A DNA stretch of 64,000 bases from Octopus sinensis (taxonomy: Eukaryota), in NCBI RefSeq assembly GCF_006345805.1, contig NC_043001.1:102548001-102612000 (forward strand). The letters are read 5' to 3'. Of this stretch, positions 3,425 to 57,872 are shown one piece after another. The notes under the pieces are model-generated. The model was not told the DNA's origin. It saw only the letters and a list, made by a program, of their open reading frames with translations, and did no database searches. Both the position numbers and the translations under genes were made by a program. Each line of letters opens with the position of its first letter. The stretch's first letter is position 1.

Positions 3425-3830
3425 TCATTAACATCATCATCATTGTTTGACCATGGTCAAGACAATGGGATTTACTATGTTACACCAGACTTCACGGTCC
3501 ATCATAGCATTACGGAGGTCCTGTTGCTGGATGCCTGTATCCCTGGAGATTACATCAGGGTAGGAGAGTGTGCGCCCTCTGGTATCGCGAGCAGATGGCT
3601 TCCAGAGGAGAAGAGTAGAAATTACCTCATTTTCAGCTCTACAACAATGTCCAGCAAACTGGACTCTTCTACCTTTCACAAGAGATGATACAGGTGGTAA
3701 TTTCCCATATATTTATACTTTAGTTGGATGACGCTTCCACAAGAGATTTTGAGCTCTCATAAGGAGGCGAGTGTAAGTTCCATCCAACCGCCTCTCAAGC
3801 TTCTTTGATAACGTCCAGGTTTCTGAGCCA
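3425..3830 (-). mobile_element. 5'-truncated RTE-clade LINE, ORF2 C-terminus and short tail
   Basis: Minus frame reads GSETWTLSKKLERRLDGTYTRLLMRAQNLLWKRHPTKV*IYGKLPPVSSLVKGRRVQFAGHCCR...DREVWCNIVN (one stop), followed by a tgatgatgatg tail. Confidence 0.85.
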
Positions 3831-4052
3831 TTTAAACCAGCCACAACCAGCCCAAATATTCTCCTTGTTTCATCTTCAAACTAGCCAGATCTGGATTCTC
3901 ACACCTACCCAACAATGTCATTCTAACAATGAAACAAACAGCCACATCATCAAAGTCTGAAAGACTACAAGGTAATGCATGGGTAATTCAAAACAATGTG
4001 AATAGATAAGCAGTACATTTGACAGATAGTAATCTGAATGCTAAAGGGTTAA
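3829..4052. mobile_element. piggyBac-like MITE lacking its left terminus
   Basis: Ends in aatctgaatgctaaaggg plus TTAA. Homologous to the two flanks of the minisatellite (27781-27885 and 32154-32274). Confidence 0.7.
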
Positions 4053-5384
4053 GTTTCAAGCTGAAGACCAACAAATATGTGGTCAGTCAACTATAATTAA
4101 GGTTAGTCTTTCAAGTACTCTGAAACCATTTCAAACATTTAGAAGACATTTAATAAACATATCTATTCAAAGGAATAATGCAATAATGATTATCACTTCA
4201 AGAAAAAGCACAATTCAATTGAACATGTATTTAGTCATGACAATCTCTTGAAACAATGACCTGACGACAACAAGGGCTTTCTGTCAGCCTGTCTTTTTCC
4301 ATCTTTCTCATTCAAGTGTACACTTTTACAGATGTCTGTGCATGCACATGTATGCACATAGGTGTGTACATGCACACACACAGACAAACACACAAACGCA
4401 CACACACACACATAATATCCTTGCTAGAGTTCTTATAACCAGAAGGATTGTGAGAAATGTTATGTTGCTATGGTTGTATTATTATCTTAGTGATGAAAGA
4501 CAAGCTGCCAGGAAATATTCTTTCCCTTCCTTCAGTAATGTTATTCCGAAACGAAAGAAAGGGAAAGAATTCCATTGAAATCCTACAGTAATATGTTTGT
4601 GTACTAGACTCATCTCTATTGCAATATCTACACATTTACATAGTTGGAGTCTATGAAAATACAAATATGCTCTTATGCAAGTGATGTGAATGTTCATATA
4701 GAAAGGTGTTGCTTTCCTCTGCCTCCTCCCTCATTCTTTTCTTTCTATCATTATATACATATAATTTCCCCCTTTTTTTTCTTCTTGCATTCACCTCTCT
4801 CTCTCTCCCTCTCTCTCCATTTCAACAGAACTGGAAACAACTGAGGGCAACTTTTATTTTTGTCTTCTGTACTCAAACTTTTATGACTGCCCTCTGCTCA
4901 TTAAAGAAGGAGGACAATAGTTTGGCAATGAATTGTTGGAGCAAATTATTTCATAAGATAAAGGAATCTACTTAGCCTCTAATCAGCCATGAAATGAGAA
5001 TGATAACAAGTGTTCAGTGGGATATTTACTAATCAAAGATGTAGGCTATGCCTTATTTCGAGGCACAATATTACATCTGAGGAAAGATTTCACAACAATA
5101 ACACCTAAGCTACAGTCACGTACATTTATATGGAGAGATATTGCTGCTGCTTTGAAAAATGATACTAAAATGCATTGTATCATCATATATCGCCTTTTAA
5201 ATTCTTTCTTATATATAAGATGACTAATTCTTGTAAAAATGGTCCTAGGCACACATATATAAACAAACATACATGAACACATTTGCATTTAAAAACAGAG
5301 ACAAGGTTATGGACATACATGGAAAATTTCAAGAATACAAACACATATCCACAGCAATGCATAAGACACAAGAACATTAAATAT

Positions 5385-5592
5385 CATGGACCCTGTACGT
5401 GTGTGGAGAAAGCACCCAGTACAGTCTGCAAAGTAGTTGGGATTAGGAAGGGCATCTAGCCATAGAAACTTGCCAAAACAGACAACTGGAGCATGGTGCA
5501 GCCTCCTGGCTTGTCAGTCCTCAGTCATACTGTCCAACCCATGCCAGCATGGAAAGCAGACATTAAATGATGATGATGCTGATGATGATGAT
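5385..5592 (+). mobile_element. RTE 3' UTR fragment with (GAT)n tail
   Basis: ttaggaagggcatctagc...ccaacccatgccagcatggaaagcagacattaaatgatgatgatg. Confidence 0.75.
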
Positions 5593-18038: not shown

Positions 18039-18956
18039 ATGTGTGTGTTTTGTTGGGGGTGGGGGAGTAGTGGATTGAAAAATCACCGTTTGGTTTTGAT
18101 TGGTCAAGGACACCTTCCAAAAGTCCCATGCAGAGAGCCTGAACTCAAAACCAAATGGTTGAGAAGGAAACTTCTTAATCACACAACCATGCCTGTGCCT
18201 GTGAGCATGTAAGAGAGGGAGAGGGAGCGGGGCACATGTATACACATATACATACGCAAATATATGTATATAAGCATTTTAATACATAATGATTAGTTTG
18301 ACAAAATATCTTGTTTTGCCAATGGCTCTTCAGGAACGAAAGAACAATATTTAGAGAAACTAATTTTAAGTTACAATTTGCAAGAATGAAAGACTGAAAT
18401 TATAAATACACACACACGTGCACGCATATTCCCACATGCACACATGATTACATATATGGACACATTTGTACACCTGTACACACATTCACACACTAACGTA
18501 CATACACATCTATACAAAAGTGTATACATATAAACAACGATGCCCACATAGTTCTACAAAAATTTCTCATTCTTCATTCAGCTGACCTAAGCATCAACAA
18601 CACAGACAATTGACTCTCATCCATTTATCCAATACTCACCTCTTCTCCTCCCATCTCTCACCCTACTTTACACTTTCTTTCATTCTTTCTTTCAAATGTT
18701 TTCATTCACTTATCTATTTAGATCCTCATTTTTTCTATCTATTTTACACACACATATATATATATATTCTGTTTTAATTTATTTTGTATTATAATTTTTT
18801 ATATATCTTTATATCTATATTTTGTAGTCATAGTTTATAATTTTATATTTTAAAAATTACATATCTTAAATGATAATATATTTTTACGTAATTGATATTT
18901 TCATATAATATACACAGTATAATTCACTTCTGTTTTCATATATATATATATATATA

Positions 18957-19400
18957 TCATCGTCATTGTTTAACGTCTGCTTTCCATGCTGGCATGGGTT
19001 GGACGATTTGACTGAGGCTGCACTAGACTCCAATCTGATCAGGCAGAGTTTCAACAGCTGGATGCCCTTCCTAACGCCAACCACTCTGAGAGTGTAGTGG
19101 GTGCTTTTATGTGCCACTGGCACGAGGGCTAGTCAGGCAGTACTGGCAACGACCATGCTCAAGTGTACTTTTTACATGCCACCTGCACAGGAGCCAGTCC
19201 ATTAGCACTGGCAATGACCTCGTTCAAATGTTTTTTCACGTGCCACCAGCACAAGTGCTAGTAAGGTGACTTAGGTAACGATCACGCCCGAATGGTGTTT
19301 TTAACGTGCCATCGGCACGGAGGCCAGCTTGTTGCTCTGGCAATGATCTCATTCGTATGGTACTCTTAGCGCTCCACTAGCAAACGGATGCCAGTCATCA
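18957..19400 (-). mobile_element. RTE 3' UTR with internal ~60-bp subrepeats
   Basis: Starts catcgtcattgtttaacgtctgctttccatgctggcatggg (reverse tail). Internal repeated tggcaa(c/t)ga...ac(a/g)tgcca units. Confidence 0.75.
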
Positions 19401-21096: not shown

Positions 21097-21115
21097 ATAT
21101 AAATATATATATATA

Positions 21116-21195
<80 letters not shown>

Positions 21196-21199
21196 CATA

Positions 21200-21247
<48 letters not shown>

Positions 21248-22347
21248 CATATATATAATATATATGTATATACATATATGTATATATATGTGTATATATA
21301 TGTATATATATATATACATATATGTATATATATGTGTATATATATGTATATATATATATATATACATATATATTATATATATATATATTATATATATATA
21401 TATAATATACATATATATATATATATGTATATACATATATATATATATATTATATATATACATATATAATATACATATATACTATATATATATATATATA
21501 CATATATTATATATATATATACATATATATATACACATATATATACACATATATATATATACATATATATATATACATATATATATATACACATATAGAT
21601 ATACATATATATACACATATATATATACATATATATACATACATATATATACACATATATATACATACATATATATATACATAATATATATATATACATA
21701 TATACATATATATATATATAATATATATACATACATATAGATATACATATATACACATATATACACATATATATATACATATATATACACATATATATAT
21801 ACACATATATATATACATATACATATATATATATACATATATATACATACATATATATATATATATATATACAATATATATATATACATATAATATATAT
21901 ATACATATAATATATATATATACATATAGATATATATATATATAACATATATATATATACATATAATATATATACATATATATATATATAACATATATAT
22001 ATATATATACATATAGATATATATATATACATACATACATATATATATAATATATATATATATACATATATATATATATTATATACATACATACATAATA
22101 TATATATATATATATAACATATATATATATATAACATATATATATATACATAATATATATATATAATATATACATACATATATATATATATTATACATAC
22201 ATACATATATATATATACATATATATATATATACATATACATATATATATATATATATATACATATAATATATATATACATAATATATATATATATACTA
22301 CATATATATATATATATATATATTACATACATACATATATACATACA

Positions 22348-22408
<61 letters not shown>

Positions 22409-22775
22409 GATATATACATACATACATACATACATATATATATATAATATACATACATACATATATACTATATATATATATATAATATATATATATTATA
22501 CATACATACATATATATACATATATATAATATATATATATACATACATACATATACATATATATAATATATATATATATATACATACATACATATATACA
22601 TATATATATATACATATATACATATATATATACAATATATATATATATAATATATATATACATACATATATACATATATATATATATTACATACATATTA
22701 CATATATATATATATATATACATACATATATATACATATAATATATATATATATACATACATATATATATAATAT

Positions 22776-22809
<34 letters not shown>

Positions 22810-22992
22810 TATACATATATATATACACATATATATATGCACATATATATATGCACATATATATACACACACACACACACACACAAACACACATACATAC
22901 ATACATACATACATACATACATACTACATACATACATACATACATACATGCATGCATGCATACATACATACATACATATATATATATATATA
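21097..22992. repeat. ~1.9 kb (TA)n/(TACA)n microsatellite field
   Basis: Direct reading; source of the YIYI-type pseudo-ORFs. Confidence 0.95.
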
Positions 22993-23731: not shown

Positions 23732-24018
23732 AATATGCTTCAACACATGAACTCATATAAAGAATCTTGCAAACCAAATCCAAAAGCGAAATATTATATA
23801 TATATACATATATTATATATGGCCCTGCTCGATCTGTAGAAAAGGCATAGGTAGAAACTCTATAAGATGTACCCAGTGTAAGCTATGGACACATAAGAGG
23901 CACAGCAATATCAAAGGAAGGCTAACTAGGAAGATAGTTTTTTTTATGTGGCAGATGTTCAGGAGCAATAAACTCTGAAAATATGCTGTGAACAACTTCT
24001 GCCACATTCCAGGAAGAA

Positions 24019-25392
24019 AAACTAGAAGTAGTTGATAGCCTCCATTACCTAGGGGACCAAGTCAGTAACAGGGAAGGATGCACTGAAAGTGTAACTGATA
24101 GAATAAGAATAGCCTGGGCAAAGTTCAGAGAGATCTTACATCTGCAGGTGACAAAGGGCCACTCACTCAGAGTAAAAGGCAGACTGTATAACACATGTGT
24201 ACTAACAGCCATGCTACATGGCAGTGAAACATGGGCCGTGACTGTTGAGGATATGCATAAGCTCGCAAGGAATGAAGCCAGTATGCTTTGCTGGATGTGT
24301 AATGTTAGTGTGCATACTTGACAGAGTGTAGGTACCTTGAGAAAAAAATTGGACCTAAGAAGCATCAGTTGTGGTGTGCAAGAAAGACAATTGCACTGGT
24401 AAGGTCATGTGGCGAGAATGAATGAGGACAGCTGTGTGAAAAAGTGCCACACCCTAGCGGCTGAGGGAACCTGTGGAAGAGGTAGACCCAGGAAAACTTG
24501 GGACAAGGTGGTGAAGCATGACCTTCGAACATTATGCCCCACCAAGGCAATGACTAGTTACCAAGACCTTTGGAAATATGCTGCGCATGAGGAGACCGGG
24601 CAAGACAAGTGAGACCATAACCCGTGGCCTTTACCAGGGGTTTAGCCAGTTCACTTATGCATATCTTTCCTTCTTTGGACACAAAACCCAGCTTGCAAAG
24701 AGAAGTTGAGGCAAGTGAAATCGAAATCAAATTCGACAACTAGCACCCATGCCAACCTCCCTTCATTGGACACTAAACTCTGCTTGCGAAGACCTGTTGG
24801 GGTGAGTGAAATCGAAATTGAACCAAATTCGATTCCTTACACTTGGCTCTGCATTGGCGCTAAACAGAGATCTCAACATACTTCCTCTAATGATATTTTC
24901 CTCCAATTTCAATAAGAGACAATCACTGCCTACAGCTATCCCTGCCCCTCTATCATTCTCCAACCTCTCGCCTGACACATAGCCACTTCTCTTAGTTCTT
25001 CTCCCTCTCTCAGGTGAGATGTCCTTGTCTTGCAAGCCACTTGGCGACCCCACGGGTACTGGTGCCATGTTAAAGGCACCACATAAAGAGTATCTGTGCT
25101 GGCACTATGTAAAAAACACCCATGCCAGCACACGTAAAAAACCACCAGTGCCATGTAAAAGGCACCTGTGTTGGTACCGCATAAAAAGCACAGAGGCTGG
25201 CCCCACATATAGAAAGACCTCTGTACACTCTGTAAAGTGGTTGCCATTAAGAAGGACATCCAGCTGTAGAAACCATGCCCAAACAGACAACTGGAGCCTG
25301 ATGACATCTTCTGGCCTGCCAGCTCCTGTCAAACCATTCAACCCATGCTAGAATGGAAAATAGATGTAAGACAATGATGATGATGATGATGT
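24019..25392 (+). mobile_element. 5'-truncated RTE LINE: ORF2 C-terminus (24019-24612, two stops) plus composite 3' UTR and (GAT)n tail
   Basis: KLEVVDSLHYLGDQV...GRLYNTCVLTAMLHGSETWAV...HW*GHVARMNEDSCVKKC...GRGRPRKTWDKVV in one frame. Confidence 0.9.
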
Positions 25393-26667
25393 AAAGGAAC
25401 ATGAACACTGCAGATCTATAACCCTCAGGTTTGTTTTAAATAATAGCCTTTACAATTACAGATCTCTTGGAGAAAAAGTAAGTCCTCAGCTTAACAAAGA
25501 CAGCATCACTGAAATTTGTCTTGTACTTGAAACTCCCAACTACTGACTCTCTACAAAACTCATTTTAGAACTGCAATGCAGCACTGCTCCTACATCTGAG
25601 ACGACACTGCTTCTTTACTCACAGAGATCTTAGAATGCATCCAAAGAAAGGTTTGGCCCATAAATATGCCATCCCTTCTCTCTGCTTTTTCTTTCTTTCT
25701 TCCATTGGAGTGGCCTCTGTTTCTTGAAAGTAGCATGTCTCATGCCATAACCATTCACTTGTCTCTCTTGTAATCTATATTGTCACAACTCTCAAATCTC
25801 TGTGCCAACCATTATGCTCTCTCTCTCGCTCTCTCAAATATCAGCCTTCAAGAGTTTCCTGTTTGCATATCTGTTCAACAATCATCAGTTTGCAACTATT
25901 CAAGTACAATGCTAAATATATCATTCCTCCTGGTCTTGGAGCACCCATAAAGACCGGGGCGCACAGTCCCCAGTTCTAAGCCAAATCAACAAAAAGAAAT
26001 AATTATTGCTCATCCCTTCTACTGCCATTTTAAAATTTAAATTTCTTTAACAGCATTTTGAATTTTTATCAGAAATTATCAATATTTGACCTTTGAGAAT
26101 TTCATAAGTGTAAAGACAATCAGCAAAAACACACAACAAACAAGACATTAATATTCCCATACAGACATGAGGAAATCTCAGGGAGCCTGAAGGTGAAAAT
26201 CTTTTAGCCACTTATCATGTATCATAGGAAATTGTATTAAATATACTCTAATGCAATAACACAAATAATTAAATTATAATATACGATGTGATAATATTAA
26301 TAATTAAATCTAAAGTAATAATGTAATGTATATTGTCTTTTCGCTACACGAGGTACTGCCTTAATTACTAGTGGCTACTATATTTTTAAAAATAATTATC
26401 TGGTAGGAAATTAACAAAGTCTTTATTTAGAATACTTATGAAAAGGTATTCATAATAGTGACCATTATTTTCTTTATTTCTTCTTTGGATAAACGGTGAC
26501 TTTTTCAATGTCTGAAATGAAACTCTCAAACGTTTTAGATTCATTTTACTCTGCTGGTCAAATGAATTGGTAAATTGGTACATTATTTCGGTACTGATGA
26601 AGAAAATATCTTTATGATATTATGTCTTTTCCTCCATCTCATATGACTCACCAGTAAAATGGCAAAA

Positions 26668-27229
26668 TACGAGGGTGAGTCAAAAAGTAATGCCATTTTG
26701 TTTAGGACAGGTATAATTACCAACACAGGAACATGTATTATACATCAAAATGAAGCTGGTCCTCTGTGGATCACATTCCTACATCTCAACATAGTCACCG
26801 TTTCTCTCAATAGCAATGTTCCACTTTCGAATGAGAGCATGTATCCCTGCCCCGTAAAATTCTGTTGACTGTCCTTTGAGCCACCTCTTCACTACAGTTT
26901 TCACTTCCTCGTTACTGGAATAATTTAGCGCCTTCAGACTATCATCTCTTTGGCCCCATGAGAGAGGCAAACATTATTCCAGTGACGAGAAAGTGAAAAC
27001 TGTAGTGAAGAGGTGGCTCAAAGAACAGTCAACAGAATTTTATGTGGCAGGGATACATGCTCTCATTCGAAAGTGGAACATTGCTATTGAGAGAAATAGT
27101 GACTATGTTGAGATGTAGGGATGTGATTCACAGAGGACCAGCTTCATTTTGATGTATAATACATGTTCCTGTGTTAGTAACTATACTTGTCCTAAACAAA
27201 ATGGCATCACTTTTTGACTCACCCTTGTA
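26668..27229. mobile_element. Mariner-derived fold-back MITE with TA TSD
   Basis: TA-cgagggtgagtcaaaaagt...actttttgactcacccttg-TA with ~255-bp inverted arms. Encodes the mariner C-terminus LAPSDYHLFGPM...YSSDEKVKTVVKRWLKEQSTEFY...WNIAIERNSDYVE. Confidence 0.9.
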
Positions 27230-27247
27230 GTATTATGCCCAGTATTC

Positions 27248-27715
27248 ATTGTTGTTGGCTTTATCCCATGTCCCAGAATTCATTTTCTTCTTTGCTGAAT
27301 GCCTCGTTTATGGTGATGCTGTTGGTGACTCTGTAGACCAATTCTTGCTAGAAGAGTTGATGGCATTGACTGCAGGGTAATATTGGTGGTGGGTGAGGTT
27401 GATTTTGTTGAGCCCTTCTCTCCTGTCATTTGATTTCTTCCTTTTCTCTTCTGGTGGCCTTGAAGTTTTCGGTTCCAATCCTGATAGAACACCACCACTT
27501 GGTGCAGCCTCAAGCTTGTGTGTCAAACAATTCTGGCTCAGTTCTAGTGGCTGCTTTCAGGGTTGCTTTGAATTGGTCCTTGTGTCTTCGAAGAGGGCAA
27601 TCCTGTGGTGTTTTTCTTGAAGGCAGCTCACTGAATGACAATACCCAGTATAGATGTACAGATAGCATCTGTAGCTATGTTTACATTCATGGTCCTCAAG
27701 TTTAAAGAAATTAAT
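27248..27715 (-). mobile_element. RTE LINE 3' fragment with C-terminal Cys/His motif
   Basis: Minus strand gives ...PLRRHKDQFKATLK..., then CSQCHQL and, after a frameshift, ARIGLQSHQQHH, followed by a ccaacaacaa tail. Confidence 0.7.
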
Positions 27716-27780: not shown

Positions 27781-30700
27781 TTTAACATTTTAAACCAAAC
27801 ATATTTAGCAAAATAATCTACCTATTTTATGTTCAAACCAGCTATATCTGGTCAAAATATTCTACCTGTCTTACGTTCAAACTTACAAGATATAGTCTCT
27901 CAAACCTACCCAACAAGATATGGTCTCTCAAACCTACCCAACAAGATATGGTCTCTCAAACCTACCCAACAACATATGGTCTCTCAAAACCTACCCAACA
28001 ACATATGGTACTTCAAACCTACCCAACAACATATGGTCTCCCAAACCTACCCAACAACATATGGTCTCTCAAACCTACCTAACAAGATATGATCTCTCAC
28101 ACCTACCCAACAAGATGTGGTCTCTCAAACCTACCCAACAACATATGGTCTCTCAAACCTACCCAACAACATATGGTCTCTCAAACCCGCCCAACAAGAT
28201 ATGATCTCTCAAACCTACCCAACAACATATGGCCTCTCAAACCTACCCAACAAGATATCTCTCTCAAACCTATCCAACAACATATGGTGTCTCAAACCTA
28301 CCCAACAACATATGGCCTCTCAAACCCACCCAACAAGATATGATCTCTCAAACCTACCCAACAACATATGGCCTCTCAAACCTACCCAACAAGATATGTC
28401 TCTCAAACCTACCCAACAACACATGGTCTCTCAAACCTACCCAACAACATATGGTCTCTCAAACACGCCCAACAAGATATGATCTTTCAAACCCACCCAA
28501 CAACATATGGTCTTTCAAACCTACCCAACAACATATGGTCTCTCAAACCTATCCAACAACATATGGTCTCTCAAACCTATCCAACAACATATGGTCTCTC
28601 AAACCTACCCAACAACATATGGTCTCTCAAACCTACCCAACAACATATGGTCTCTCAAACCTATCCAACAACATATGGTCTCTCAAACCTACCCAACAAC
28701 ATATGGTCTCTCAAACCCACCCAACAAGATATAGTCTCTCAAACCTACCCAACAACATATGGTCTCTCAAACCTACCCAACAACATATGGTCTCTCAAAC
28801 CCACCCAACCACATATGGTCTCTCAAACCCACCCAACAACATATGGTCTCTCAAACCTACTCAACAACATATGGTCTCTCAAACGCACCCAACAACATAT
28901 AGTCTCTCAAACCCACCCAACAACATATGGTCTCTCAAACCTACCCAACAACATATGGTCTCTCAAACCTACCCAACAACATATGGTCTCTCAAACCTAC
29001 CCAACAACATATGGTCTCTCAAACCCACCCAACAAGATATAGTCTCTCAAACCCACCCAACAAGATATAGTCTCTCAAACCTACCCAACAACATATGGTC
29101 TCTCAAACCTACCCAACAACATATGGTCTCTCAAACCTACCCAACAACATATGGTCTCTCAAACCCACCCAACAACATATGGTCTTTCAAACCTACCCAA
29201 CAAGATATGGTCTCTCAAACCTACCCAACAAGATATGGTCTCTCAAACCCACCCAACAAGATATAGTCTCTCAAACCTACCCAACAACATATGGTCTCTC
29301 AAACCTACCCAACAACATATGGTCTCTCAAACCTACCCAACAACATATGGTCTCTCAAACCCACCCAACAAGATATAGTCTCTCAAACCTACCCAACAAC
29401 ATATGGTCTCTCAAACCTACCCAACAACATATGGTCTCTCAAACCCACCCAACAAGATATAGTTTCTCAAACCTACCCAACAACATATGGTCTCTCAAAC
29501 CTACCTAACAAGATATGATCTCTCAAACCTACCCAACAAGATATGATCTCTCAAACCTACCCAACAACATATGGTCTCTCAAACCCACCCAACAACATAT
29601 GGTTTTTCAAACCTACCCAACAAGATATGGTCTCTCAAACCTACCCAACAACATATGGTCTCTCAAACCCACCCAACAAGATATAGTCTCTCAAACCTAC
29701 CCAACAACATATGGTCTCTCAAACCTACCCAACAACATATGGTCTCTCAAACCTACCCAACAACAATTGGTCTCTCAAACCTACCCAACAACATATGGTC
29801 TTTCAAACCTACCCAACAACATATGGTCTCTCAAACCTACCCAACAAGATATGGTCTCTCAAACCCACCCAACAGGATATAGTCTCTCAAACCTACCCAA
29901 CAACATATGGTCTCTCAAACCTACCTAACAAGATATGATCTCTCAAACCTACCCAACAAGATATGATCTCTCAAACCTACCCAACAAGATATGGTCTCTC
30001 AAACCACCCAACAAGATATGATCTCTCAAACCTACCCAACAAGATATGATCTCTCAAACCTACCAACAAGATATGATCTCTCAAACCTACCAACAAGATA
30101 TGGTCTCTCAAACCCACCCAACAAGATATAGTCTCTCAAACCTACCCAACAAGATATGGTCTCTCAAACCTACCCAACAAGATATGATCTCTCAAACCTA
30201 CCCAACAAGATATGATCTCTCAAACCTACCCAACAAGATATGATCTCTCAAACCTACCCAACAAGATATGATCTCTCAAACCTACTCAACAACATATGGT
30301 CTCTCAAACGCACCCAACAACATATAGTCTCTCAAACCCACCCAACAACATATGGTCTCTCAAACCTACCCAACAACATATGGTCTCTCAAACCTACCCA
30401 ACAACATATGGTCTCTCAAACCTACCCAACAAGATATGGTCTCTCAAACCCACCCAACAAGATATAGTCTCTCAAACCCACCAACAACATATGGTCTCTC
30501 TCAAACCTACCCAACAACATATGGTCTCTCAAACCTACCCACAACATATGGTCTCTCAACCTACCCAACAACATATGGTCTCTCAAACCTACCCAACAAC
30601 ATATGGTCTCTCAAATCTACCCAACAACATATGGTCTCTCAAACCTACCCAACAACATATGGTCTCTCAAACCCACCCAACAACATATGGTCTTTCAAAC

Positions 30701-32274
30701 CTACCCAACAAGATATGGTCTCTCAAACCCACCCAACAAGATATAGTCTCTCAAACCTACCCAACAACATATGGTCTCTCAAACCTACCCAACAACATAT
30801 GGTCTCTCAAACCTACACAACAACATATGGTCTCTCAAACCCACCCAACAACATATGGTTTTTCAAACCTACCCAACAAGATATGGTCTCTCAAACCTAC
30901 CCAACAACATATGGTCTCTCAAACCCACCCAACAAGATATAGTCTCTCAAACCTACCCAACAACATATGGTCTCTCAAACCTACCCAACAACATATGGTC
31001 TCTCAAAACCCCCCAACAAGATATAGTCTCTCAAACCTACCCAACAACATATGGTCTCTCAACCTACCTAACAAGATATGATCTCTCAAACCTACCCAAC
31101 AAGATATGATCTCTCAAACCTACCCAACAAGATATGGTCTCTCAAACCTACCCAACAAGATATGATCTCTCAAACCTACCCAACAAGATATGATCTCTCA
31201 AACCTACCCAACAAGATATGATCTCTCAAACTACCCAACAAGATATGGTCTCTCAAACCCACCCAACAAGATATAGTCTCTCAAACCTACCCACAAGATA
31301 TGATCTCTCAAACCTACCCAACAAGATATGATCTCTCAACCTACCCAACAAGATATGATCTCTCAAACCTACCCAACAACATATGGTCTCTCAAACCTAC
31401 CCACAACATATGGTCTCTCAAACCCACCAACAACATATGGTTTTTCAAACCTACCCAACAAGATATGGTCTCTCAAACCTACCCCAACATATGGTCTCTC
31501 AAACCACCCAACAAGATATAGTCTCTCAAACCTACCCAACAACATATGGTCTCTCAAACCTACCCAACAACATATGGTCTCTCAAACCTACCCAACAACA
31601 ATTGGTCTCTCAAACCTACCCAACAACATATGGTCTTTCAAACCTACCAACAACATATGTCTCTCAAACCTACCCAACAAGATATGGTCTCTCAAACCCA
31701 CCCAACAAGATATAGTCTCTCAAACCTACCCAACAAGATATAGTCTCTCAAACCTACCCAACAACATATGGTCTCTCAAACCTACCTAACAAGATATGAT
31801 CTCTCAAACCTACCCAACAAGATATGATCTCTCAAACCTACCCAACAAGATATGGTCTCTCAAACCTACCCAACAAGATATGATCTCTCAAACCTACCCA
31901 ACAAGATATGATCTCTCAAACCTACCCAACAAGATATGATCTCTCAAACCTACCCAACAAGATATGGTCTCTCAAACCCACCCAACAAGATATAGTCTCT
32001 CAAACCTACCCAACAAGATATGATCTCTCAAACCTACCCAACAAGATATGATCTCTCAAACCTACCCAACAAGATATGGTCTCTCAAACCCACCCAACAA
32101 GATATAGTCTCTCAAGCCTCCCCAACAAGATATGATCTCTCAAACCTACCCAACTGTGTCTAAAATTAAACAGTCAGTTATCTTCTCAAAGCTACATGAT
32201 GCATCATTCATTCAAAGCAATGAGAACGAATAAACATTACATTTGACAGGTGAATCTGAATGCGAAAGGGTTAG
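27781..32274. mobile_element. piggyBac-like MITE split by an internal minisatellite expansion
   Basis: Left flank ...aaatattctacctgtcttacgttcaaac and right flank ...acatttgacaggtgaatctgaatgcgaaagggttag both match the 3829-4052 copy in order. Confidence 0.75.
27886..32153. repeat. 28-bp minisatellite, ~4.3 kb, about 150 units, consensus tctcaaacctacccaacaa(c/g)atatggtc
   Basis: Direct reading of head-to-tail units with no spacers. Copy number is length divided by 28. Confidence 0.97.
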
Positions 32275-34425: not shown

Positions 34426-35845
34426 CATCATCGTTTAATGTCTGCTTTTCATGCTGGCATGGATTGGACAGAAGTCAGCTAGAAAGGAGCCTGCACCAGA
34501 CTTCTGTGTATTTTGGCAGGGTTTTTACGACTGGATGCCCTTCCTAACGCCAACCACCCAGAGTAGAGTGAGTGCTTTTTATGTAGCACCAGCACAGGCA
34601 AGGTCAGTTTTGGCATGGTTTTTTTTTACAGCTGGATGCCAACCACTTTACAGAGTGGACTGGAAGCTTTTTACGTGGCACCAGCACCGACAGGGTCACC
34701 AAGTAACTTGCAAGACAAAGATCCTTTGAGAAGGGAGGGGCCATTGGAGGAGGTGGCTCCATGCCAGGTGATGAAAGGTTAGAATGAGACAGAGAGAAAG
34801 AAACAGGTATCTTGTTGTAGAGGAGGTACATGGCTACCTGGCTAGAAAGAGAGAGGGAGGGGGAGAGAGAGAGAGAGAGTGGGAGACAGCAACAGTGCAA
34901 GAGAGAACAGGAGAGATTGTGGCAAAATGCCGGGCATATTCACAAGGGACAGGGATCAGAATATAAATGGGATGATCAAGAAAAGAGAAAGATAGAGGGT
35001 AGTAAGTGCTAGGGCATACCTTGAGGTATGGAGATCATAATGTAAGTGGCAGGGCATTGCCAAAGAGGCGCGAGTAGAGAGTGGGGGGAGGGTAATGCAG
35101 TGAGTGGTGAAAACCTTGGTATATATTGAGGGGGTGGAGGGGAGGTACTGGATAGCAATGATACAGTGAACAAGACTGGGAGGACAAAATTGGGGAATGA
35201 GAGATAAGCACAATGCATGAAAGAGGAGATATGAGGAACAGCCGAGATGTAGTTTGGTTTGTTAGGGTAGGGTAGGTTGTGTGAAAAGTTTCTTGTTCTG
35301 TGTGGGTAGAACACAGCACTTCTGGAATTCATTTTGCTGACATGGGCAGGTCTTCTCAAGAATCTCATATCATTAGACATCTTGGTCCATTGTCATTTCC
35401 GCCATGTGATCCCACATCCTGAGATCAGTCCTTACCACTTCATCCCATGTCTTCCTGGGTTTCCCTCTTCCGTGGGTACCATCCACATTTAGTGACCAAC
35501 ACTTCTTTATACAGCTGTCTTCAGTGACCAACACTTCTTTATACAGTTGTCTTCATTCATGCGCATCACATGTCCAAACCAACATGCTGCATTTGATTCC
35601 TGACTTTTCTCTCAATACATTTGCACTTTGTCATACATGCACACTGATGTTGCACATCCAACGGTGCATACTACCTTCATTCCTCTTTAGTCTATGCATG
35701 TCTTCCACATTCAGAGCCCATGCCTCACTACTATGTAGTATAGCCATTTTCACACAAGCATCATACAGTCTGCCTCTCATTCTTAGAGAGAGTCCTTTAG
35801 TTACCAACAAAGGTAGTAGCTCCCTGAACTTGCTCCATCCTATTT
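34426..35845 (-). mobile_element. 5'-truncated RTE LINE (ORF2 C-terminus plus long 3' UTR)
   Basis: IGWSKFRELLPLLVTKGLSLRMRGRLYDACV...WFGHVMRMNEDNCIKKCW, same family as 24019-24612. Carries a 32-bp tandem duplication at 35491-35554. Confidence 0.85.
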
Positions 35846-38192
35846 CACATAAAGCATCTATAAAAGCTAAATTTATAAGTTCAAAAATTGCAGAATTTGT
35901 TAGTGGGCAGTTTACCTTAAAGGTAAAGCACTATGACTGGTAATCACAGAGATGTGAGTTCGAGTCTCATGGCTGGTACTAATAAATTTTTCTGCAATAT
36001 AAGGATGTTCTATCCTATTCATGCTATTCAGCATTATTATTACTATTACTATTATCATGCATTTGAGAATAAAATATTTCCATATCTGTATATTTCAATA
36101 CATCTCAAGGCTTCAAAAAAAAAAAAAAAGAAAAACAAGTGAACTTTGTTTACATACAACATAATTTCTAGAAACAAAACTTTCAAAGCATCTTCCACCA
36201 CTGCTAATTTGGTCACCTAGGTAACAGAAACTACCTACAACTTCAAGAGAGCCTCCTGGGCATTTGAGAGAACCTAAGTCTCATGTGCTTCAAGTGATTA
36301 TTGTTCCTGCACATCTACCGCATTTGAAGATGACTTATCTTTCTATATTCTAGTGTTCTTCATTTCAAGAGCTAAACAAAAAGGAGGCAGATAATTAGTT
36401 AGCATTTTGGTTAATTATCTGTCCAGATAATTAATTGGTCAGACTATGCTATTTCAAAGAAAGGGTAACGACTGTTAATGGATATTGAAACAGTAAAAAG
36501 TAACCGGAAAAATTCTAGACACTACAGAAGCTTGCTCAGATCTTCAGTTTTGAAAGAGGTTCGATAAGTAAACCAACTACGCTCCTCCATTTAATATCCC
36601 AATGCAGGGACAGAGTCAACTACAACAGACACAGGCACAGGTGTGTGATCAAGAAATCTGCTTCTGACTCATGTGGCTCCAAGTTCAGTCTCACAGCATG
36701 GCACCTTGGGCAAGTGTCTCATATAACCCAGGGATTGCCAATGGCTTGAAAGAGAATCTGATTAATGGAAACTGAAACAGATCCATTGTGCCTGTGTAAA
36801 TATTTTTAAAAACCTATGCCAAGCTGATGTCATAGGTTGCAGCTCAGAAACTGACATTGTTAGCATTACCTGAGTGATGCTAACATGAAAACGAAGGTGC
36901 AAGAAGATGAAATGAACATTCTTTATCTTTTTATACAAAAGACTTTTTATTTATAGACTAAACTGATAATAAGGAAATAGATAATTTGTTAGTAAACCAT
37001 GATGTTGATCAGAACAAATTATTACAAAAGAAAAACTTTGCTGCTTCAAATGTTATTTGCGATGCAGAGAGAGGGGGGGGGGAGAAGTACCTAGAACTGT
37101 AACAAAGACAGTTACAAGAGACAAATGCATCTCAGCATCATTAGCAAAACCCAAACTGTTTTGGACCCTAGAGTCATACTGTAAGTGGGACTAAGAGAGA
37201 GAGAAACTAAAATGATATGATGATGGACTGCTTGGATGAACACAAAACAATGAAATATTAGAAAAACAATTTAAGTAAATGGATGGATGAATTTAAAAAG
37301 TAAAAGTAAGTGCTGGTAGAAAAATTCCAAGTTTATAAAAGAATTGCAAAAATAAAAGATTATGCCATGAAGATGGTAGAGAAAGATAAATTATGGAGAT
37401 TGTAAATTTGAATGAGAGAATTGGGTTTACAGGAACTGAATGATGCAAAACAAGTGTTGAAAGAGTTTCCATGGGTCTATTATTGTCTAAGAAACAATGC
37501 TAATTCAACAGTTGATCCATTTCTAAATATTTATTTATTCTAGAACTACGTCTAGTGAAACATATCTTATGTCTAGTTTGGATGAGATGTGGTAGGATGC
37601 AAGTAGTCTATATTTACAGTATACAAATTAGTCAGACAAATTTGCATAAAGATTAAGGATCTTAAAAAGCTACACACACACACACACACAAGTTCATCCA
37701 ATATGAAATATAAATACTATTATTCTTGTATATTTTTTCTGGATTCAATCCCTGCACTGCAGCCATATAGGGGCACCACCTTTAAGAGGTTTAGTTAATT
37801 ATATAATTAGCCCCAATGCTTTGTTTGGAAGTTATTTTATTAATTTTGTAAAGGAGAAAAGTCAAAGTTGACTTGTGCATTTAGAAATACAGACAAGAGG
37901 AAACCCAAAATTTTATGTTCAATGGCCTGATTCAGCTAACTCTTGCCCATGTCCACGTATTAACTCACTCTCTTTCTTTCTCTTTCTCTCTCACACACAC
38001 CCACACACACAAAGATAAGCATCTAAGGATTTTCCAGGCAATTTCCCACCCGTTAAATTTCACAGAGCAAGCTTTAATCAATCTGAAGTTGCCCACGGTG
38101 CACCCAATGTCAGTGAGTGTGGAACCATGTGATGATCAAGCAAACACAGTCATGCCTACACTCTCTTAAACACATTTCCATTTATACATATA

Positions 38193-38422
38193 TTAACCCT
38201 TTTATTACCAACCCAGCTGAAACTGGCTCTGGCTCTGTAGTACAAATCTCTTGTTTTAATAAGTTTTGAATAAAAATCTTCCACCAAAAGTTAGTCACAA
38301 TTTATGTTCCTAACACTAGCTTAATGATAACTAAGTTATTTTACTAAATTCTTTGTTATATTCAGAATTAATTGAAAGAAACACAAAGCATCTCAAAATA
38401 ATTACGGTAATGAAAGGGTTAA
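38193..38422. mobile_element. piggyBac-like MITE (second family)
   Basis: TTAA-cccttttattacc...ggtaatgaaaggg-TTAA: terminal inverted repeats and TTAA TSD. Confidence 0.8.
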
Positions 38423-54953: not shown

Positions 54954-55565
54954 TCATTTTTCTTTTGCCCACAACAGATGTTTAATCTGATGGCCATACT
55001 GAATCACAGAATCTCACAAATTTTTTCAATCTTCATTTTCAGTAACTCCTTCTGGGATTTGGTGGTAGTAGCAGTGGTGGTAGTCATTGTCGTCATCAAC
55101 ATCATCATTACTGAAGGTAGCGAAATGGCAGAGTTGTTAGTACACCGGACAGATCAATATTTGATCTGACACTCTAAATTCGAATCCCATCAGCACTGAC
55201 ATTGCTTTTCATCATTTTTAGGGTCTCTAAGTACTGATTCCAGGCAGGAGATCAACAGGGCTGGTAGAGCATCAGTTTTGTGCTCTCTATTTCAGCTCTT
55301 TGAGTTGTGACAACAATCCTTATGACACTAGCATTAAGCTGTATCAGTCTTGCCTTTCGCTAGACAAGGATGTAGGGAAGAGAGACTCAGATGGGTAACT
55401 GCTAGTCTATTATAGACACCCCACCTAAAAAAAAAAAAAATTTTAAAAACCACTTCCTAGGCCTGTAACTTGAAAAGAAAGTTTCCAGATGCAGATATTT
55501 TATCCTTAGAGGGCAACACTATTGACTGTGTGATCAGCTGGTTGATTGATAACTATTGTCTTTTA

Positions 55566-55706
55566 GGAAGGGCATCCAAGTGTAGAAACTTTGCCAGGTC
55601 AGATTGGAGCCTGGGGCAGCCTTCTAGCTAGCCAGTCCTCAGTCAAACAGTCTAACCCATGCCAGCATGGAAAGCGGATGTTAAACGATGATGATGATGA
55701 TGATGA
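55566..55706 (+). mobile_element. Short RTE 3' tail insertion with 9-bp TSD
   Basis: tgtctttta at 55557-55565 and 55707-55715, with a (GAT)n tail. Confidence 0.85.
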
Positions 55707-57021: not shown

Positions 57022-57210
57022 ATCATCATCATCATTTAACGTCCACTTTCCATGCTAGCATGGGTTGGACGATTTTGACTGAGGGTTGGCGAACCAGATG
57101 GCTGCACCGGGCTCCAATCTTGATTTGGCAGAGTTTCTACAGCTGGATGCCCTTTCTAACGTCAACCACTCCAAGAGTGTAGCGGGTGGTTTTTATGTGC
57201 CACCGGCACG
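57022..57210 (-). mobile_element. RTE 3' tail insertion
   Basis: catcatcatttaacgtccactttccatgctagcatggg, the reverse tail. Confidence 0.85.
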
Positions 57211-57732
57211 TACTGGCACGTAAAATATGTTTCGTGTATTGACATGTACAAAGAAACAGGTTGTGAATTTGCTCAGGCCCCAAATACTACCAGTCGATGA
57301 TCTAAGAATGTTGCTTCTTTATTCAACACAGGAAGCTGTCATTGTTCTGTAACACATTAAGGAAACAGTCTACTGAATGTGACCCCTAATATCTTGGTTT
57401 GTTGCTCCAGAGAAAAGCAGCAGATATCCAAATTGCAGTGGTATTCCACATGAATGTTCCACATTTGTTTCACTGTACCATACATCTTACTACTAAAAAT
57501 AAACTAGACTTACAAGAAAGCTCCAGAAAAATTGGGATTAACTGCAACTGGACAAATCCTTTGTTGCAACTATCAGTCCTTCAGTATTCTATGCCTTCAT
57601 TTTCGAGCTGTCACTGGTTAGCATCAGGTGGCTTCTTTTTTTTTTTTTTTAATGTGACAAGTTGGTGTTGCAATGGATATTTGGATATTTCCTATGAGAG
57701 AGCTCACTTTCCGTCTAAATGTCATTGTTTAA

Positions 57733-57872
57733 GAAGGGCATCTAGCCATAGAAACCACGCTAAAGCTGACACTGGAGCTAAGCATACCTCTGTTGCTTGA
57801 CAGATCCTGTCAAACCATCCAAGCCATACCAGTACGGAAAGTGGACGTTAAACGATGATGATGATGATGATG
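57733..57872 (+). mobile_element. RTE 3' tail insertion
   Basis: aagggcatctagccatagaaacc...ggacgttaaacgatgatgatg. Confidence 0.8.

What the first reader, a model, noticed from the sequence alone, without database searches (positions are those of the whole stretch)
27781..32274. A 4.3-kb minisatellite born inside a piggyBac-like MITE
Seen in sequence: the array is bracketed, in order, by the left and right parts of the MITE that also occurs un-expanded at 3829-4052. The MITE-internal segment ccagatctggattctcacacctacccaacaa matches the array phase caagatatggtctctcaaacctacccaacaa at 26 of 31 positions by hand alignment. Inference: one 28-bp internal segment expanded about 150-fold. Established: MITEs and other transposons can seed satellites. 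The window holds both an ancestor-like copy and the product.
Basis: partly seen in the sequence, partly recalled or inferred. Interest (0 to 1): 0.75.

Follow-up and report, generated by a model that had tools for sequence, protein, structure and literature searches.

The report
Minisatellite grown inside a small transposon
A 28-base piece inside a small, non-coding mobile element, probably in an octopus genome, has been copied head-to-tail 153 times into a 4.3-kb array; an unexpanded copy of the same element lies 24 kb away, which makes this a clear but ordinary example of a well-known way that tandem repeats arise.

Summary
Tandem Repeats Finder reports one array at 27885-32154, with period 28, 153 copies and 92% matches. 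The DNA on either side aligns in order to the left and right parts of a 213-bp element at 3836-4048 (E = 4e-10 and 5e-15). With the array collapsed to one unit, the two copies are 73% identical from end to end. The array sits where the solo copy has a single 28-mer (3885-3912, 23/28 identical). Outside the array, the monomer core occurs only once in the 64 kb, at that spot.

Homology stops sharply at TTAA on both sides (TTAG at one end). The 3' end is the piggyBac-type ...AAAGGG|TTAA. Neither copy has a detectable terminal inverted repeat, so the labels "MITE" and "piggyBac-like" are only partly met.

The array grew in place. Its monomers differ by 8.4% on average, and ten-monomer blocks recur at about 99% identity, while the arms have diverged by 27%.

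The host is probably an octopod. No further family copies could be fetched, so the direction of change (solo copy ancestral or contracted) rests on two copies.

Transposon-seeded tandem arrays are well documented, for example Xmix/Xstir in Xenopus and DTC84 in clams. This is a new member of a known kind, of low to moderate interest.

The parts
27790..27793 (+). TTAA at the left edge of the expanded copy; candidate target-site duplication
   Evidence: Read. Homology to the solo copy begins here. There is no homology further left.
27794..27885 (+). Left arm of the expanded copy. It contains a 44-bp tandem duplication (27809-27852 and 27853-27896, 75% identical) that the solo copy lacks.
   Evidence: 27832-27916 aligns to 3831-3915 at 74% (E = 3.6e-10), and 27789-27851 also aligns to 3831-3894.
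27886..32153 (+). Array of 153 monomers of 28 bp, 4,268 bp in all. Consensus CAACATATGGTCTCTCAAACCTACCCAA. The plus strand is G-poor (7.7% G).
   Evidence: TRF; segmentation; variant and block structure; base composition.
32154..32270 (+). Right arm of the expanded copy, ending in ...AATCTGAATGCGAAAGGG
   Evidence: 32138-32273 aligns to 3897-4051 at 72% (E = 4.6e-15). The terminal 22-mer is shared by the two copies with 1 mismatch.
32271..32274 (+). TTAG at the right edge; a TTAA with one substitution
   Evidence: Read and the boundary print-out. There is no homology further right.
3832..4052 (+). Unexpanded (solo) copy: TTAA (3832-3835), a 213-bp body (3836-4048), TTAA (4049-4052)
   Evidence: TTAA occurs at 0.58% of window positions.
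3885..3912 (+). The single 28-mer of the solo copy, CCAGATCTGGATTCTCACACCTACCCAA, which corresponds to the array monomer. It matches the variant CAAGATATGGTCTCTCAAACCTACCCAA at 23 of 28 positions.
   Evidence: Its core is the only match to the monomer core outside the array.

Best explanation
A short (about 215-235 bp) non-coding mobile element inserted at two places in this window. Its ends are bounded by TTAA, and its 3' end is of the piggyBac type. The host is probably an octopod.

In the copy at 27790-32274, one internal 28-bp segment was duplicated. The segment already sat in a stretch of degenerate 22-44-bp sub-repeats. The first duplication probably arose by replication slippage or misaligned repair between short direct matches: the unit starts with CAAG/CCAG, and the DNA just after the unit starts with CAA.

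Once two or more units existed, unequal exchange and replication errors between misaligned units enlarged the array to 153 units. The later steps duplicated blocks of ten or more units at a time. The array is most likely a neutral, length-variable minisatellite with no function of its own.

Shown here: the array, the in-order arms, the single-unit homologue, the sharp TTAA boundaries, the block duplications, and the fact that the array is younger than the arms. Inferred: the slippage start, the unequal-exchange growth, neutrality, and the superfamily.
For: - Array: period 28, 153 copies.
- Both arms align in order to the solo copy, with the array exactly at the single 28-mer 3885-3912.
- The monomer core occurs outside the array only in the solo copy (expected 0.06).
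- Homology ends at TTAA/TTAG on both sides of both copies, and 2 kb of outer flank on each side shares nothing. This argues for a discrete inserted unit rather than a segmental duplication.
- The 3' terminal 22-mer ...AATCTGAATGCNAAAGGG|TTAA is shared by both copies. Its end resembles that of a genuine piggyBac-type MITE in the same window.
- Growth happened in place. The arms differ by 27% (K2P 0.34) and the monomers by 8.4% on average.
- Ten-monomer blocks recur with 3 edits in 280 bp. In 300 shuffles of monomer order the smallest value was 6 and the mean 10.2.
- The leftmost 24 or so monomers have no close partner, as expected for a poorly homogenised array edge.
- A neighbouring 44-bp tandem duplication shows that this part of the element is prone to tandem duplication.
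- Precedents are described in PMC6004289, PMC3879986 and PMC9659126.
Against: - Only two copies of the element are available, so its consensus, true ends and ancestral repeat number are unknown.
- No terminal inverted repeat is detectable, and the 5' end is ACC, not CCC. The mobile-element class is therefore not settled.
- No hairpin-forming potential above shuffled controls was found at the unit junction (z between -1.3 and +1.0). Nothing points to a specific trigger for the first duplication.
- The array length comes from a single assembly and could not be checked against reads.
Confidence: 0.72

Rival explanations
1. The element family carries a variable internal cassette of tandem repeats as its normal state, as in the DTC84/pearl elements or Xmix/Xstir. 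The copy at 27790 inserted already holding several 28-bp units, and the solo copy at 3832-4052 has contracted to a single unit. On this reading the minisatellite was not born at this locus, only enlarged there.
For: The left arm differs between the two copies by one 44-bp sub-repeat unit, so internal repeat number does vary within the family. In the solo copy the 28-mer is preceded by a related 22-mer (TTCAAACTAGCCAGATCTGGAT, read). Repeat-carrying MITEs with 1-5 core repeats are documented (PMC3879986).
Against: The solo copy has exactly one unit in perfect register with both junctions. Most of the array consists of recent block duplications much younger than the arms, so nearly all of the 153 units arose in place in either case.
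Confidence: 0.17
2. The shared 215-bp unit is not a transposon. It would be a fragment of a larger composite repeat, or a small duplicated segment, that happens to end near TTAA. The array would then be an ordinary minisatellite that arose in non-mobile DNA.
For: No terminal inverted repeat was found. Only two copies lie in the 64 kb. No relatives were found in any searchable collection.
Against: Both ends of both copies stop at TTAA or TTAG. The chance of a TTAA within 2 bases of a given boundary is about 0.03. The 3' end has the piggyBac-type AAAGGG|TTAA terminus, also seen on a genuine MITE in the window. The two copies lie 24 kb apart in unrelated flanks and have diverged by 27%, which fits an old dispersed family.
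Confidence: 0.07
3. The array exists, but its length and internal order are partly an assembly artefact, produced by collapse or over-expansion of a tandem repeat.
For: Tandem arrays of short units are hard to assemble. No reads were available for checking.
Against: The array holds 53 distinct monomer variants in a non-periodic, structured order, with a diverged left edge. That pattern is what real sequence looks like, not a collapsed or padded consensus.
Confidence: 0.04

Closest known systems
Xmix (T2-MITE, Kolobok superfamily) and its Xstir tandem repeats in Xenopus (Hikosaka & Kawahara 2004, as summarised in PMC6004289 and PMC9659126)
   Same: A small non-autonomous DNA element that targets TTAA and has an amplified internal segment forming tandem repeats.
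   Different: Xmix has clear inverted terminal repeats with an AGGRR terminus, and Xstir is a large genome-wide repeat family. Here the terminus is ...GGG|TTAA (piggyBac type) and no inverted repeat is detectable. Only one expanded locus is known.
DTC84 and pearl-type repeat-carrying MITEs of bivalve molluscs (PMC3879986)
   Same: A mollusc host, and a short non-coding element with flanking 'cassette' arms around a central block of tandem core repeats whose number varies between copies.
   Different: DTC84 carries up to five core repeats, has an AA target duplication, short inverted repeats and a palindrome at each unit junction. Here there are 153 units of 28 bp at a single locus, the flanks are TTAA, and no junction hairpin signal was found.
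miDNA4 MITE-driven satellite of Xenopus tropicalis and other transposon-derived mini- and satellite DNAs (review PMC9659126, which also cites about 7,276 transposon-derived human minisatellites)
   Same: The general route: a monomer arises inside a non-autonomous element, is amplified in tandem, and the array is then homogenised.
   Different: Those cases were established genome-wide. Here the evidence is one expanded and one unexpanded copy.
Helentron-borne satellite-like arrays of the Pacific oyster (PMC7492417)
   Same: Mollusc tandem arrays embedded in non-autonomous mobile elements.
   Different: Those are rolling-circle elements with different ends and no TTAA duplication. Neither strand here begins with the Helitron TC terminus.

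Membership tests
MITE (miniature inverted-repeat transposable element) | Short (under about 800 bp) and non-coding | tested here: met
   The solo body is 213 bp. The expanded copy is about 236 bp once the array is reduced to one unit. No ORF of 110 aa or more overlaps either arm.
MITE (miniature inverted-repeat transposable element) | Terminal inverted repeats | tested here: not met
   The first 45 nt were aligned to the reverse complement of the last 45 nt. Scores were 13 and 10 against a shuffle mean of about 12.4 (202 and 476 of 500 shuffles scored as well). The inverted partner of the 3' terminal 22-mer is absent from the window.
MITE (miniature inverted-repeat transposable element) | Target-site duplication flanking each copy | tested here: met
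   TTAA/TTAA around the solo copy and TTAA/TTAG around the expanded copy. TTAA frequency in the window is 0.58% per position.
MITE (miniature inverted-repeat transposable element) | Many dispersed copies in the genome | not testable with these tools
   There are two copies in the 64 kb. No cephalopod genome is searchable, and scans of metagenome, viral and prokaryote collections found nothing.
piggyBac superfamily (non-autonomous derivative) | TTAA target-site duplication | tested here: met
piggyBac superfamily (non-autonomous derivative) | 5'-CCC...GGG-3' termini within 12-19-bp inverted repeats | tested here: inconclusive
   The 3' end is AAAGGG|TTAA in both copies. It resembles the end of the genuine MITE at 38193-38422. 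The 5' end is TTAA|ACCA in both copies, and there is no inverted repeat.
piggyBac superfamily (non-autonomous derivative) | An autonomous partner with a DDD transposase and the same ends | not testable with these tools
   There is none in the window.
Kolobok superfamily (T2-MITE type) | TTAA target plus a terminal RR / AGGRR motif | tested here: not met
   TTAA is present, but the termini read AC... and ...GG (CC on the other strand), not AG/AGGRR as listed in PMC6004289.
Transposon-derived minisatellite | The monomer is homologous to an internal segment of the element, and the array is bracketed by both arms in order | tested here: met
   23/28 (26/31) identity to 3885-3912. The arms align at E = 3.6e-10 and 4.6e-15. 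The collapsed copy is collinear with the solo copy at 73% identity.
Transposon-derived minisatellite | Unexpanded copies are the rule, and arrays do not occur independently of the element | not testable with these tools
   Only one unexpanded copy is available. No similar array appeared among predicted proteins or in the DNA scans, but those collections hold little cephalopod DNA.

The most novel reading that the evidence does not exclude
The 28-bp repeat is not a one-off. It would be the seed of a lineage-specific octopod satellite family that spreads by riding on a one-ended element that still moves between TTAA sites without a conventional inverted repeat, much as Xstir rides on Xmix. That would give cephalopods a first documented transposon-to-satellite pathway and an unusual asymmetric-ended mobile element.
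Probability: 0.08. Interest if true: 0.5.

Novelty: new member of a known kind. Interest (0 to 1): 0.27.

Why it matters
This is a compact, easily read example of how a tandem array can start from a single internal piece of a mobile element. The unexpanded state and the 153-unit state lie in one window, and the record of block duplications is still legible.

The held literature yielded no satellite survey of cephalopods: the search for 'cephalopod' and 'satDNA' returned no such study, and the recent Octopus vulgaris repeat annotation (PMC13282606) does not mention satellites. The locus could therefore serve as a worked example, and possibly as a length-variable marker. It does not change what is known about how such arrays arise.

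Tried and rejected
- Relatives of the array among predicted proteins. The 345-aa reading frame through the array gave no hit among 5.8 billion clusters.
- Exact-pattern scans for the monomer and for the element's 3' end in metagenome, viral and prokaryote collections. All were empty.
- Text search for the monomer in the paper library. No hits.
- Exact look-ups of two ORFs from the right flank, to fetch the same locus from another assembly. Neither is on record. Look-ups of the Octopus-like RTE (a LINE retrotransposon) proteins P0019 and P0038 also failed.
- P0037 returned a 1.6-kb metagenome contig carrying the same RTE and a SINE-like repeat. It holds no copy of the element.
- Hairpin-triggered slippage. 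The solo copy has a 10-bp palindrome, CCAGATCTGG, at the start of the unit. DNA folding of the junctions is no better than shuffled controls, so I dropped this as a specific mechanism.
- A strict higher-order repeat. No single multiple of 28 bp stands out. Repeated blocks sit at irregular lags of 26, 45, 51, 60 and 66-67 units.
- Kolobok, Helitron, and SINE or tRNA-derived classifications. The termini do not fit, and neither tRNA scanning nor Rfam finds anything in the element.
- Shared LINE context. Both copies lie just right of a minus-strand LINE tail fragment, but the flanks share no DNA homology, so this is coincidence.
- Gene context. ORFs of 50 aa or more within about 5 kb on each side gave no match to any solved-structure sequence. 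By eye they look like remnants of LINE and mariner elements.
Full report
**1. What is there**

Tandem Repeats Finder reports one large array at 27885-32154, with period 28, 153.1 copies, 92% matches and 1% indels. A dynamic-programming segmentation against the consensus CAACATATGGTCTCTCAAACCTACCCAA gives 153 monomers between 27886 and 32153. Of these, 132 are exactly 28 bp, and there are 53 distinct variants. The plus strand is strongly G-poor: 36.8% A, 34.3% C, 7.7% G and 21.2% T.

**2. The flanks are the two halves of an element that also occurs unexpanded**

A sensitive blastn of 3800-4080 against the window finds only three kinds of match: itself, the array's right flank and the array's left flank.
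- Right flank: 32138-32273, 72% identity, E = 4.6e-15.
- Left flank: 27832-27916, 74% identity, E = 3.6e-10.
- A ladder of weak hits to every monomer.

I collapsed the array to one unit and aligned the expanded copy to the solo copy. The two are collinear from end to end, with 148 of 203 aligned positions identical (73%, K2P 0.34).

The array sits exactly where the solo copy has the single 28-mer CCAGATCTGGATTCTCACACCTACCCAA (3885-3912). The last monomer runs straight into the sequence that follows that 28-mer in the solo copy: CTGTGTC...TAAAATTAAACAG in the expanded copy against CAATGTCATTCTAACAATGAAACAAACAG in the solo copy.

The 19-nt monomer core, allowing 3 mismatches, is found 141 times in the array and once elsewhere in the 64 kb, at 3897-3915. 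Chance expectation is 0.06. A profile search with nhmmer found no further copies of the element in the window.

**3. Is it a mobile element, and of which kind?**

Homology stops abruptly at both ends of both copies. Comparing 2 kb of outer flank on each side gives only chance-level matches.

The boundaries are:
- solo copy: TTAA (3832-3835) and TTAA (4049-4052)
- expanded copy: TTAA (27790-27793) and TTAG (32271-32274)

TTAA occupies 0.58% of window positions, so a TTAA within 2 bases of a given boundary has a probability of about 0.03.

The 3' terminus ...AATCTGAATGC(T/G)AAAGGG|TTA(A/G) is the best-conserved part of the element: 21 of 22 positions are shared by the two copies. It is the canonical piggyBac-type end.

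The window also holds a textbook piggyBac-type MITE of another family at 38193-38422. It reads TTAA|CCCTTTTATTACC...GGTAATGAAAGGG|TTAA, with a 13-bp inverted repeat matching at 12 of 13 positions (score 21 against a shuffle mean of 11.3 and maximum of 19). Its end resembles the 3' end of the array-bearing element (AATG..AAAGGGTTAA).

Against the label:
- Neither copy of the array-bearing element has a terminal inverted repeat. Scores were 13 and 10 against a shuffle mean of about 12.4.
- The 5' end is TTAA|ACCA in both copies.
- The expected 5' partner of the 3' end is absent from the window.

Kolobok elements also target TTAA, but their termini begin AG/AGGRR (PMC6004289), which does not fit. 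Helitron and SINE features are absent.

I therefore call it a TTAA-bounded, non-coding, dispersed element with a piggyBac-type 3' end. It fails the inverted-repeat criterion of a MITE in the two old copies available.

**4. Internal anatomy of the left arm**

The left arm is built of degenerate sub-repeats.
- In the solo copy the order is A (TTTAAACCAGCCACAACCAGCC), B (CAAATATTCTCCTTGTTTCATC), A (TTCAAACTAGCCAGATCTGGAT), then TCTCACACCTACCCAA.
- The expanded copy has one more A-B pair. This is a 44-bp tandem duplication at 27809-27852 and 27853-27896, 75% identical.

The 28-bp unit spans the tail of the last A unit (CAAGATATAGTC) plus the following 16-mer. The expansion therefore arose in a stretch that was already weakly repetitive and had already undergone one older tandem duplication.

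The unit begins CAAG (CCAG in the solo copy). The sequence directly after the unit in the solo copy begins CAAT. This 3-base match 28 bp apart is the kind of short direct repeat at which slippage can create the first duplication. That step is an inference.

The solo copy has a perfect 10-bp palindrome, CCAGATCTGG, at the start of the unit. Single-strand DNA folding of the junctions is no better than shuffled controls, so I do not invoke a hairpin.

**5. How the array grew**

- Monomers differ from each other by 2.36 edits on average (8.4%), far less than the 27% between the arms of the two copies. The array has therefore been generated or homogenised long after the two copies diverged.
- There is no strict higher-order period. 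Runs of 4-6 identical monomers recur at lags of 23-66 units.
- Ten-monomer windows recur with as few as 3 edits in 280 bp (about 99% identity). In 300 shuffles of monomer order the smallest value was 6 and the mean 10.2.
- Blocks around monomers 40-56, 60-68 and 72-80 reappear around 100-112, 126-134, and both 113-120 and 139-147. These are the marks of unequal exchange or replication restart between misaligned units, which duplicated 0.3-2-kb blocks.
- The first 24 or so monomers (27886-28556) have no close partner (best 14-16 edits per 8 monomers), as expected for a poorly homogenised array edge.
- Two positions split the array into its main variants. Position 4 is G, as in the solo copy, in 62 monomers and C in 70. 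Position 22 is T, as in the solo copy, in 101 monomers and C in 31.

**6. Host and surroundings**

The window is AT-rich (about 36% GC) and dense in microsatellites.

A fragment of an RTE-type LINE (a retrotransposon) at 23992-24318 has as its only named relative an uncharacterised Octopus bimaculoides protein (67% identity over 63% of the query). A metagenome contig that carries the same RTE at 83% DNA identity also shares a SINE-like repeat found at about eight places in the window. The source is therefore probably an octopod; the species was not determined.

ORFs of 50 aa or more within about 5 kb of the array gave no match to any solved-structure sequence. By eye they look like remnants of LINE and mariner elements, and I found no evidence of a host gene.

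piggyBac families are reported in Octopus vulgaris (PMC13282606). That paper does not mention satellites. A library search for 'cephalopod' and 'satDNA' returned no survey of cephalopod satellite DNA.

**7. Comparison with what is known**

Tandem arrays seeded by internal segments of non-autonomous DNA elements are well documented:
- Xmix/Xstir in Xenopus, a TTAA-targeting element with an amplified internal segment (PMC6004289).
- DTC84 and pearl elements in bivalves (PMC3879986).
- miDNA4, Tetris and many others (review PMC9659126). The same review cites about 7,276 transposon-derived minisatellites in the human genome.

The present case works like these. Within the held literature it is new only in its host group, in the particular element, and in the absence of a detectable inverted repeat.

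**8. Limits**

- With two copies I cannot tell whether a single unit is the ancestral state or a contraction.
- I cannot say whether the 28-mer forms arrays elsewhere in the genome.
- No cephalopod genome could be reached. Scans of the metagenome, viral and prokaryote collections, the protein search with the array's reading frame, and the exact ORF look-ups all came back empty.
- The array length rests on a single assembly.

**9. Verdict**

The central interpretation, in-place expansion of a transposon-internal 28-mer, is well supported. The 'piggyBac-like MITE' label is only partly met. This is a new member of a known kind, of low to moderate interest.

Noticed in passing
window 38193-38422: A textbook piggyBac-type MITE of a different family. 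It reads TTAA|CCCTTTTATTACC ... GGTAATGAAAGGG|TTAA, with a 13-bp terminal inverted repeat matching at 12 of 13 positions and a 222-bp body. It is single-copy in the window.
   Followed up: partly
window 26666-27231: A mariner-derived foldback element about 560 bp left of the array-bearing element. It has two 257-bp arms that are 95% complementary, 48 nt apart. Each arm carries the remnant of a mariner transposase C-terminus (...FY.AGIHALIRKWNIAIERN.DYVEM), ends of the form CGAGGGTGAGTCAAAAAGTAATG..., and TA on both sides.
   Followed up: partly
window 21097-22865: A very long, impure (AT)n tract: about 1.77 kb, 902 copies, 80% matches. It runs into (ACAC)n at 22865-22948. GC content falls to 23% there.
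   Followed up: no
window 23819-24732 (+) and 35376-36250 (-): Two copies of the same RTE-type LINE 3' region in opposite orientation, on either side of the array region. The first is 83% identical over 919 bp to ENA metagenome contig ERZ22665968 k127_13032110 (L001). Its only named protein relative is from Octopus bimaculoides.
   Followed up: partly
window 18936-19368, 57025-57209, 869-1135, 55563-55698, 5409-5577, 25236-25359, 34440-34598, 57729-57865: A SINE-like dispersed repeat present at about eight or more places in the window and also on contig L001. A peptide motif (...CHVVGLNPEPYGWE...) seen in several ORF translations, often beside (AC)n/(GT)n tracts, may belong to it or to another repeat; I did not check that the coordinates coincide.
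   Followed up: no
window 35906-35979 (+): A tRNA-Thr(GGT)-like sequence, barely above the Rfam threshold (30.5 bits against 29) and also called by ARAGORN. It abuts the RTE fragment, so it may be the head of a tRNA-derived SINE rather than a gene.
   Followed up: no
window 3443-3712 (-) and 27283-27640 (-): Each copy of the array-bearing element lies 120-150 bp to the right of a minus-strand LINE C-terminal tail fragment. The two fragments belong to different families and share no DNA homology, so the shared context appears to be coincidence.
   Followed up: yes
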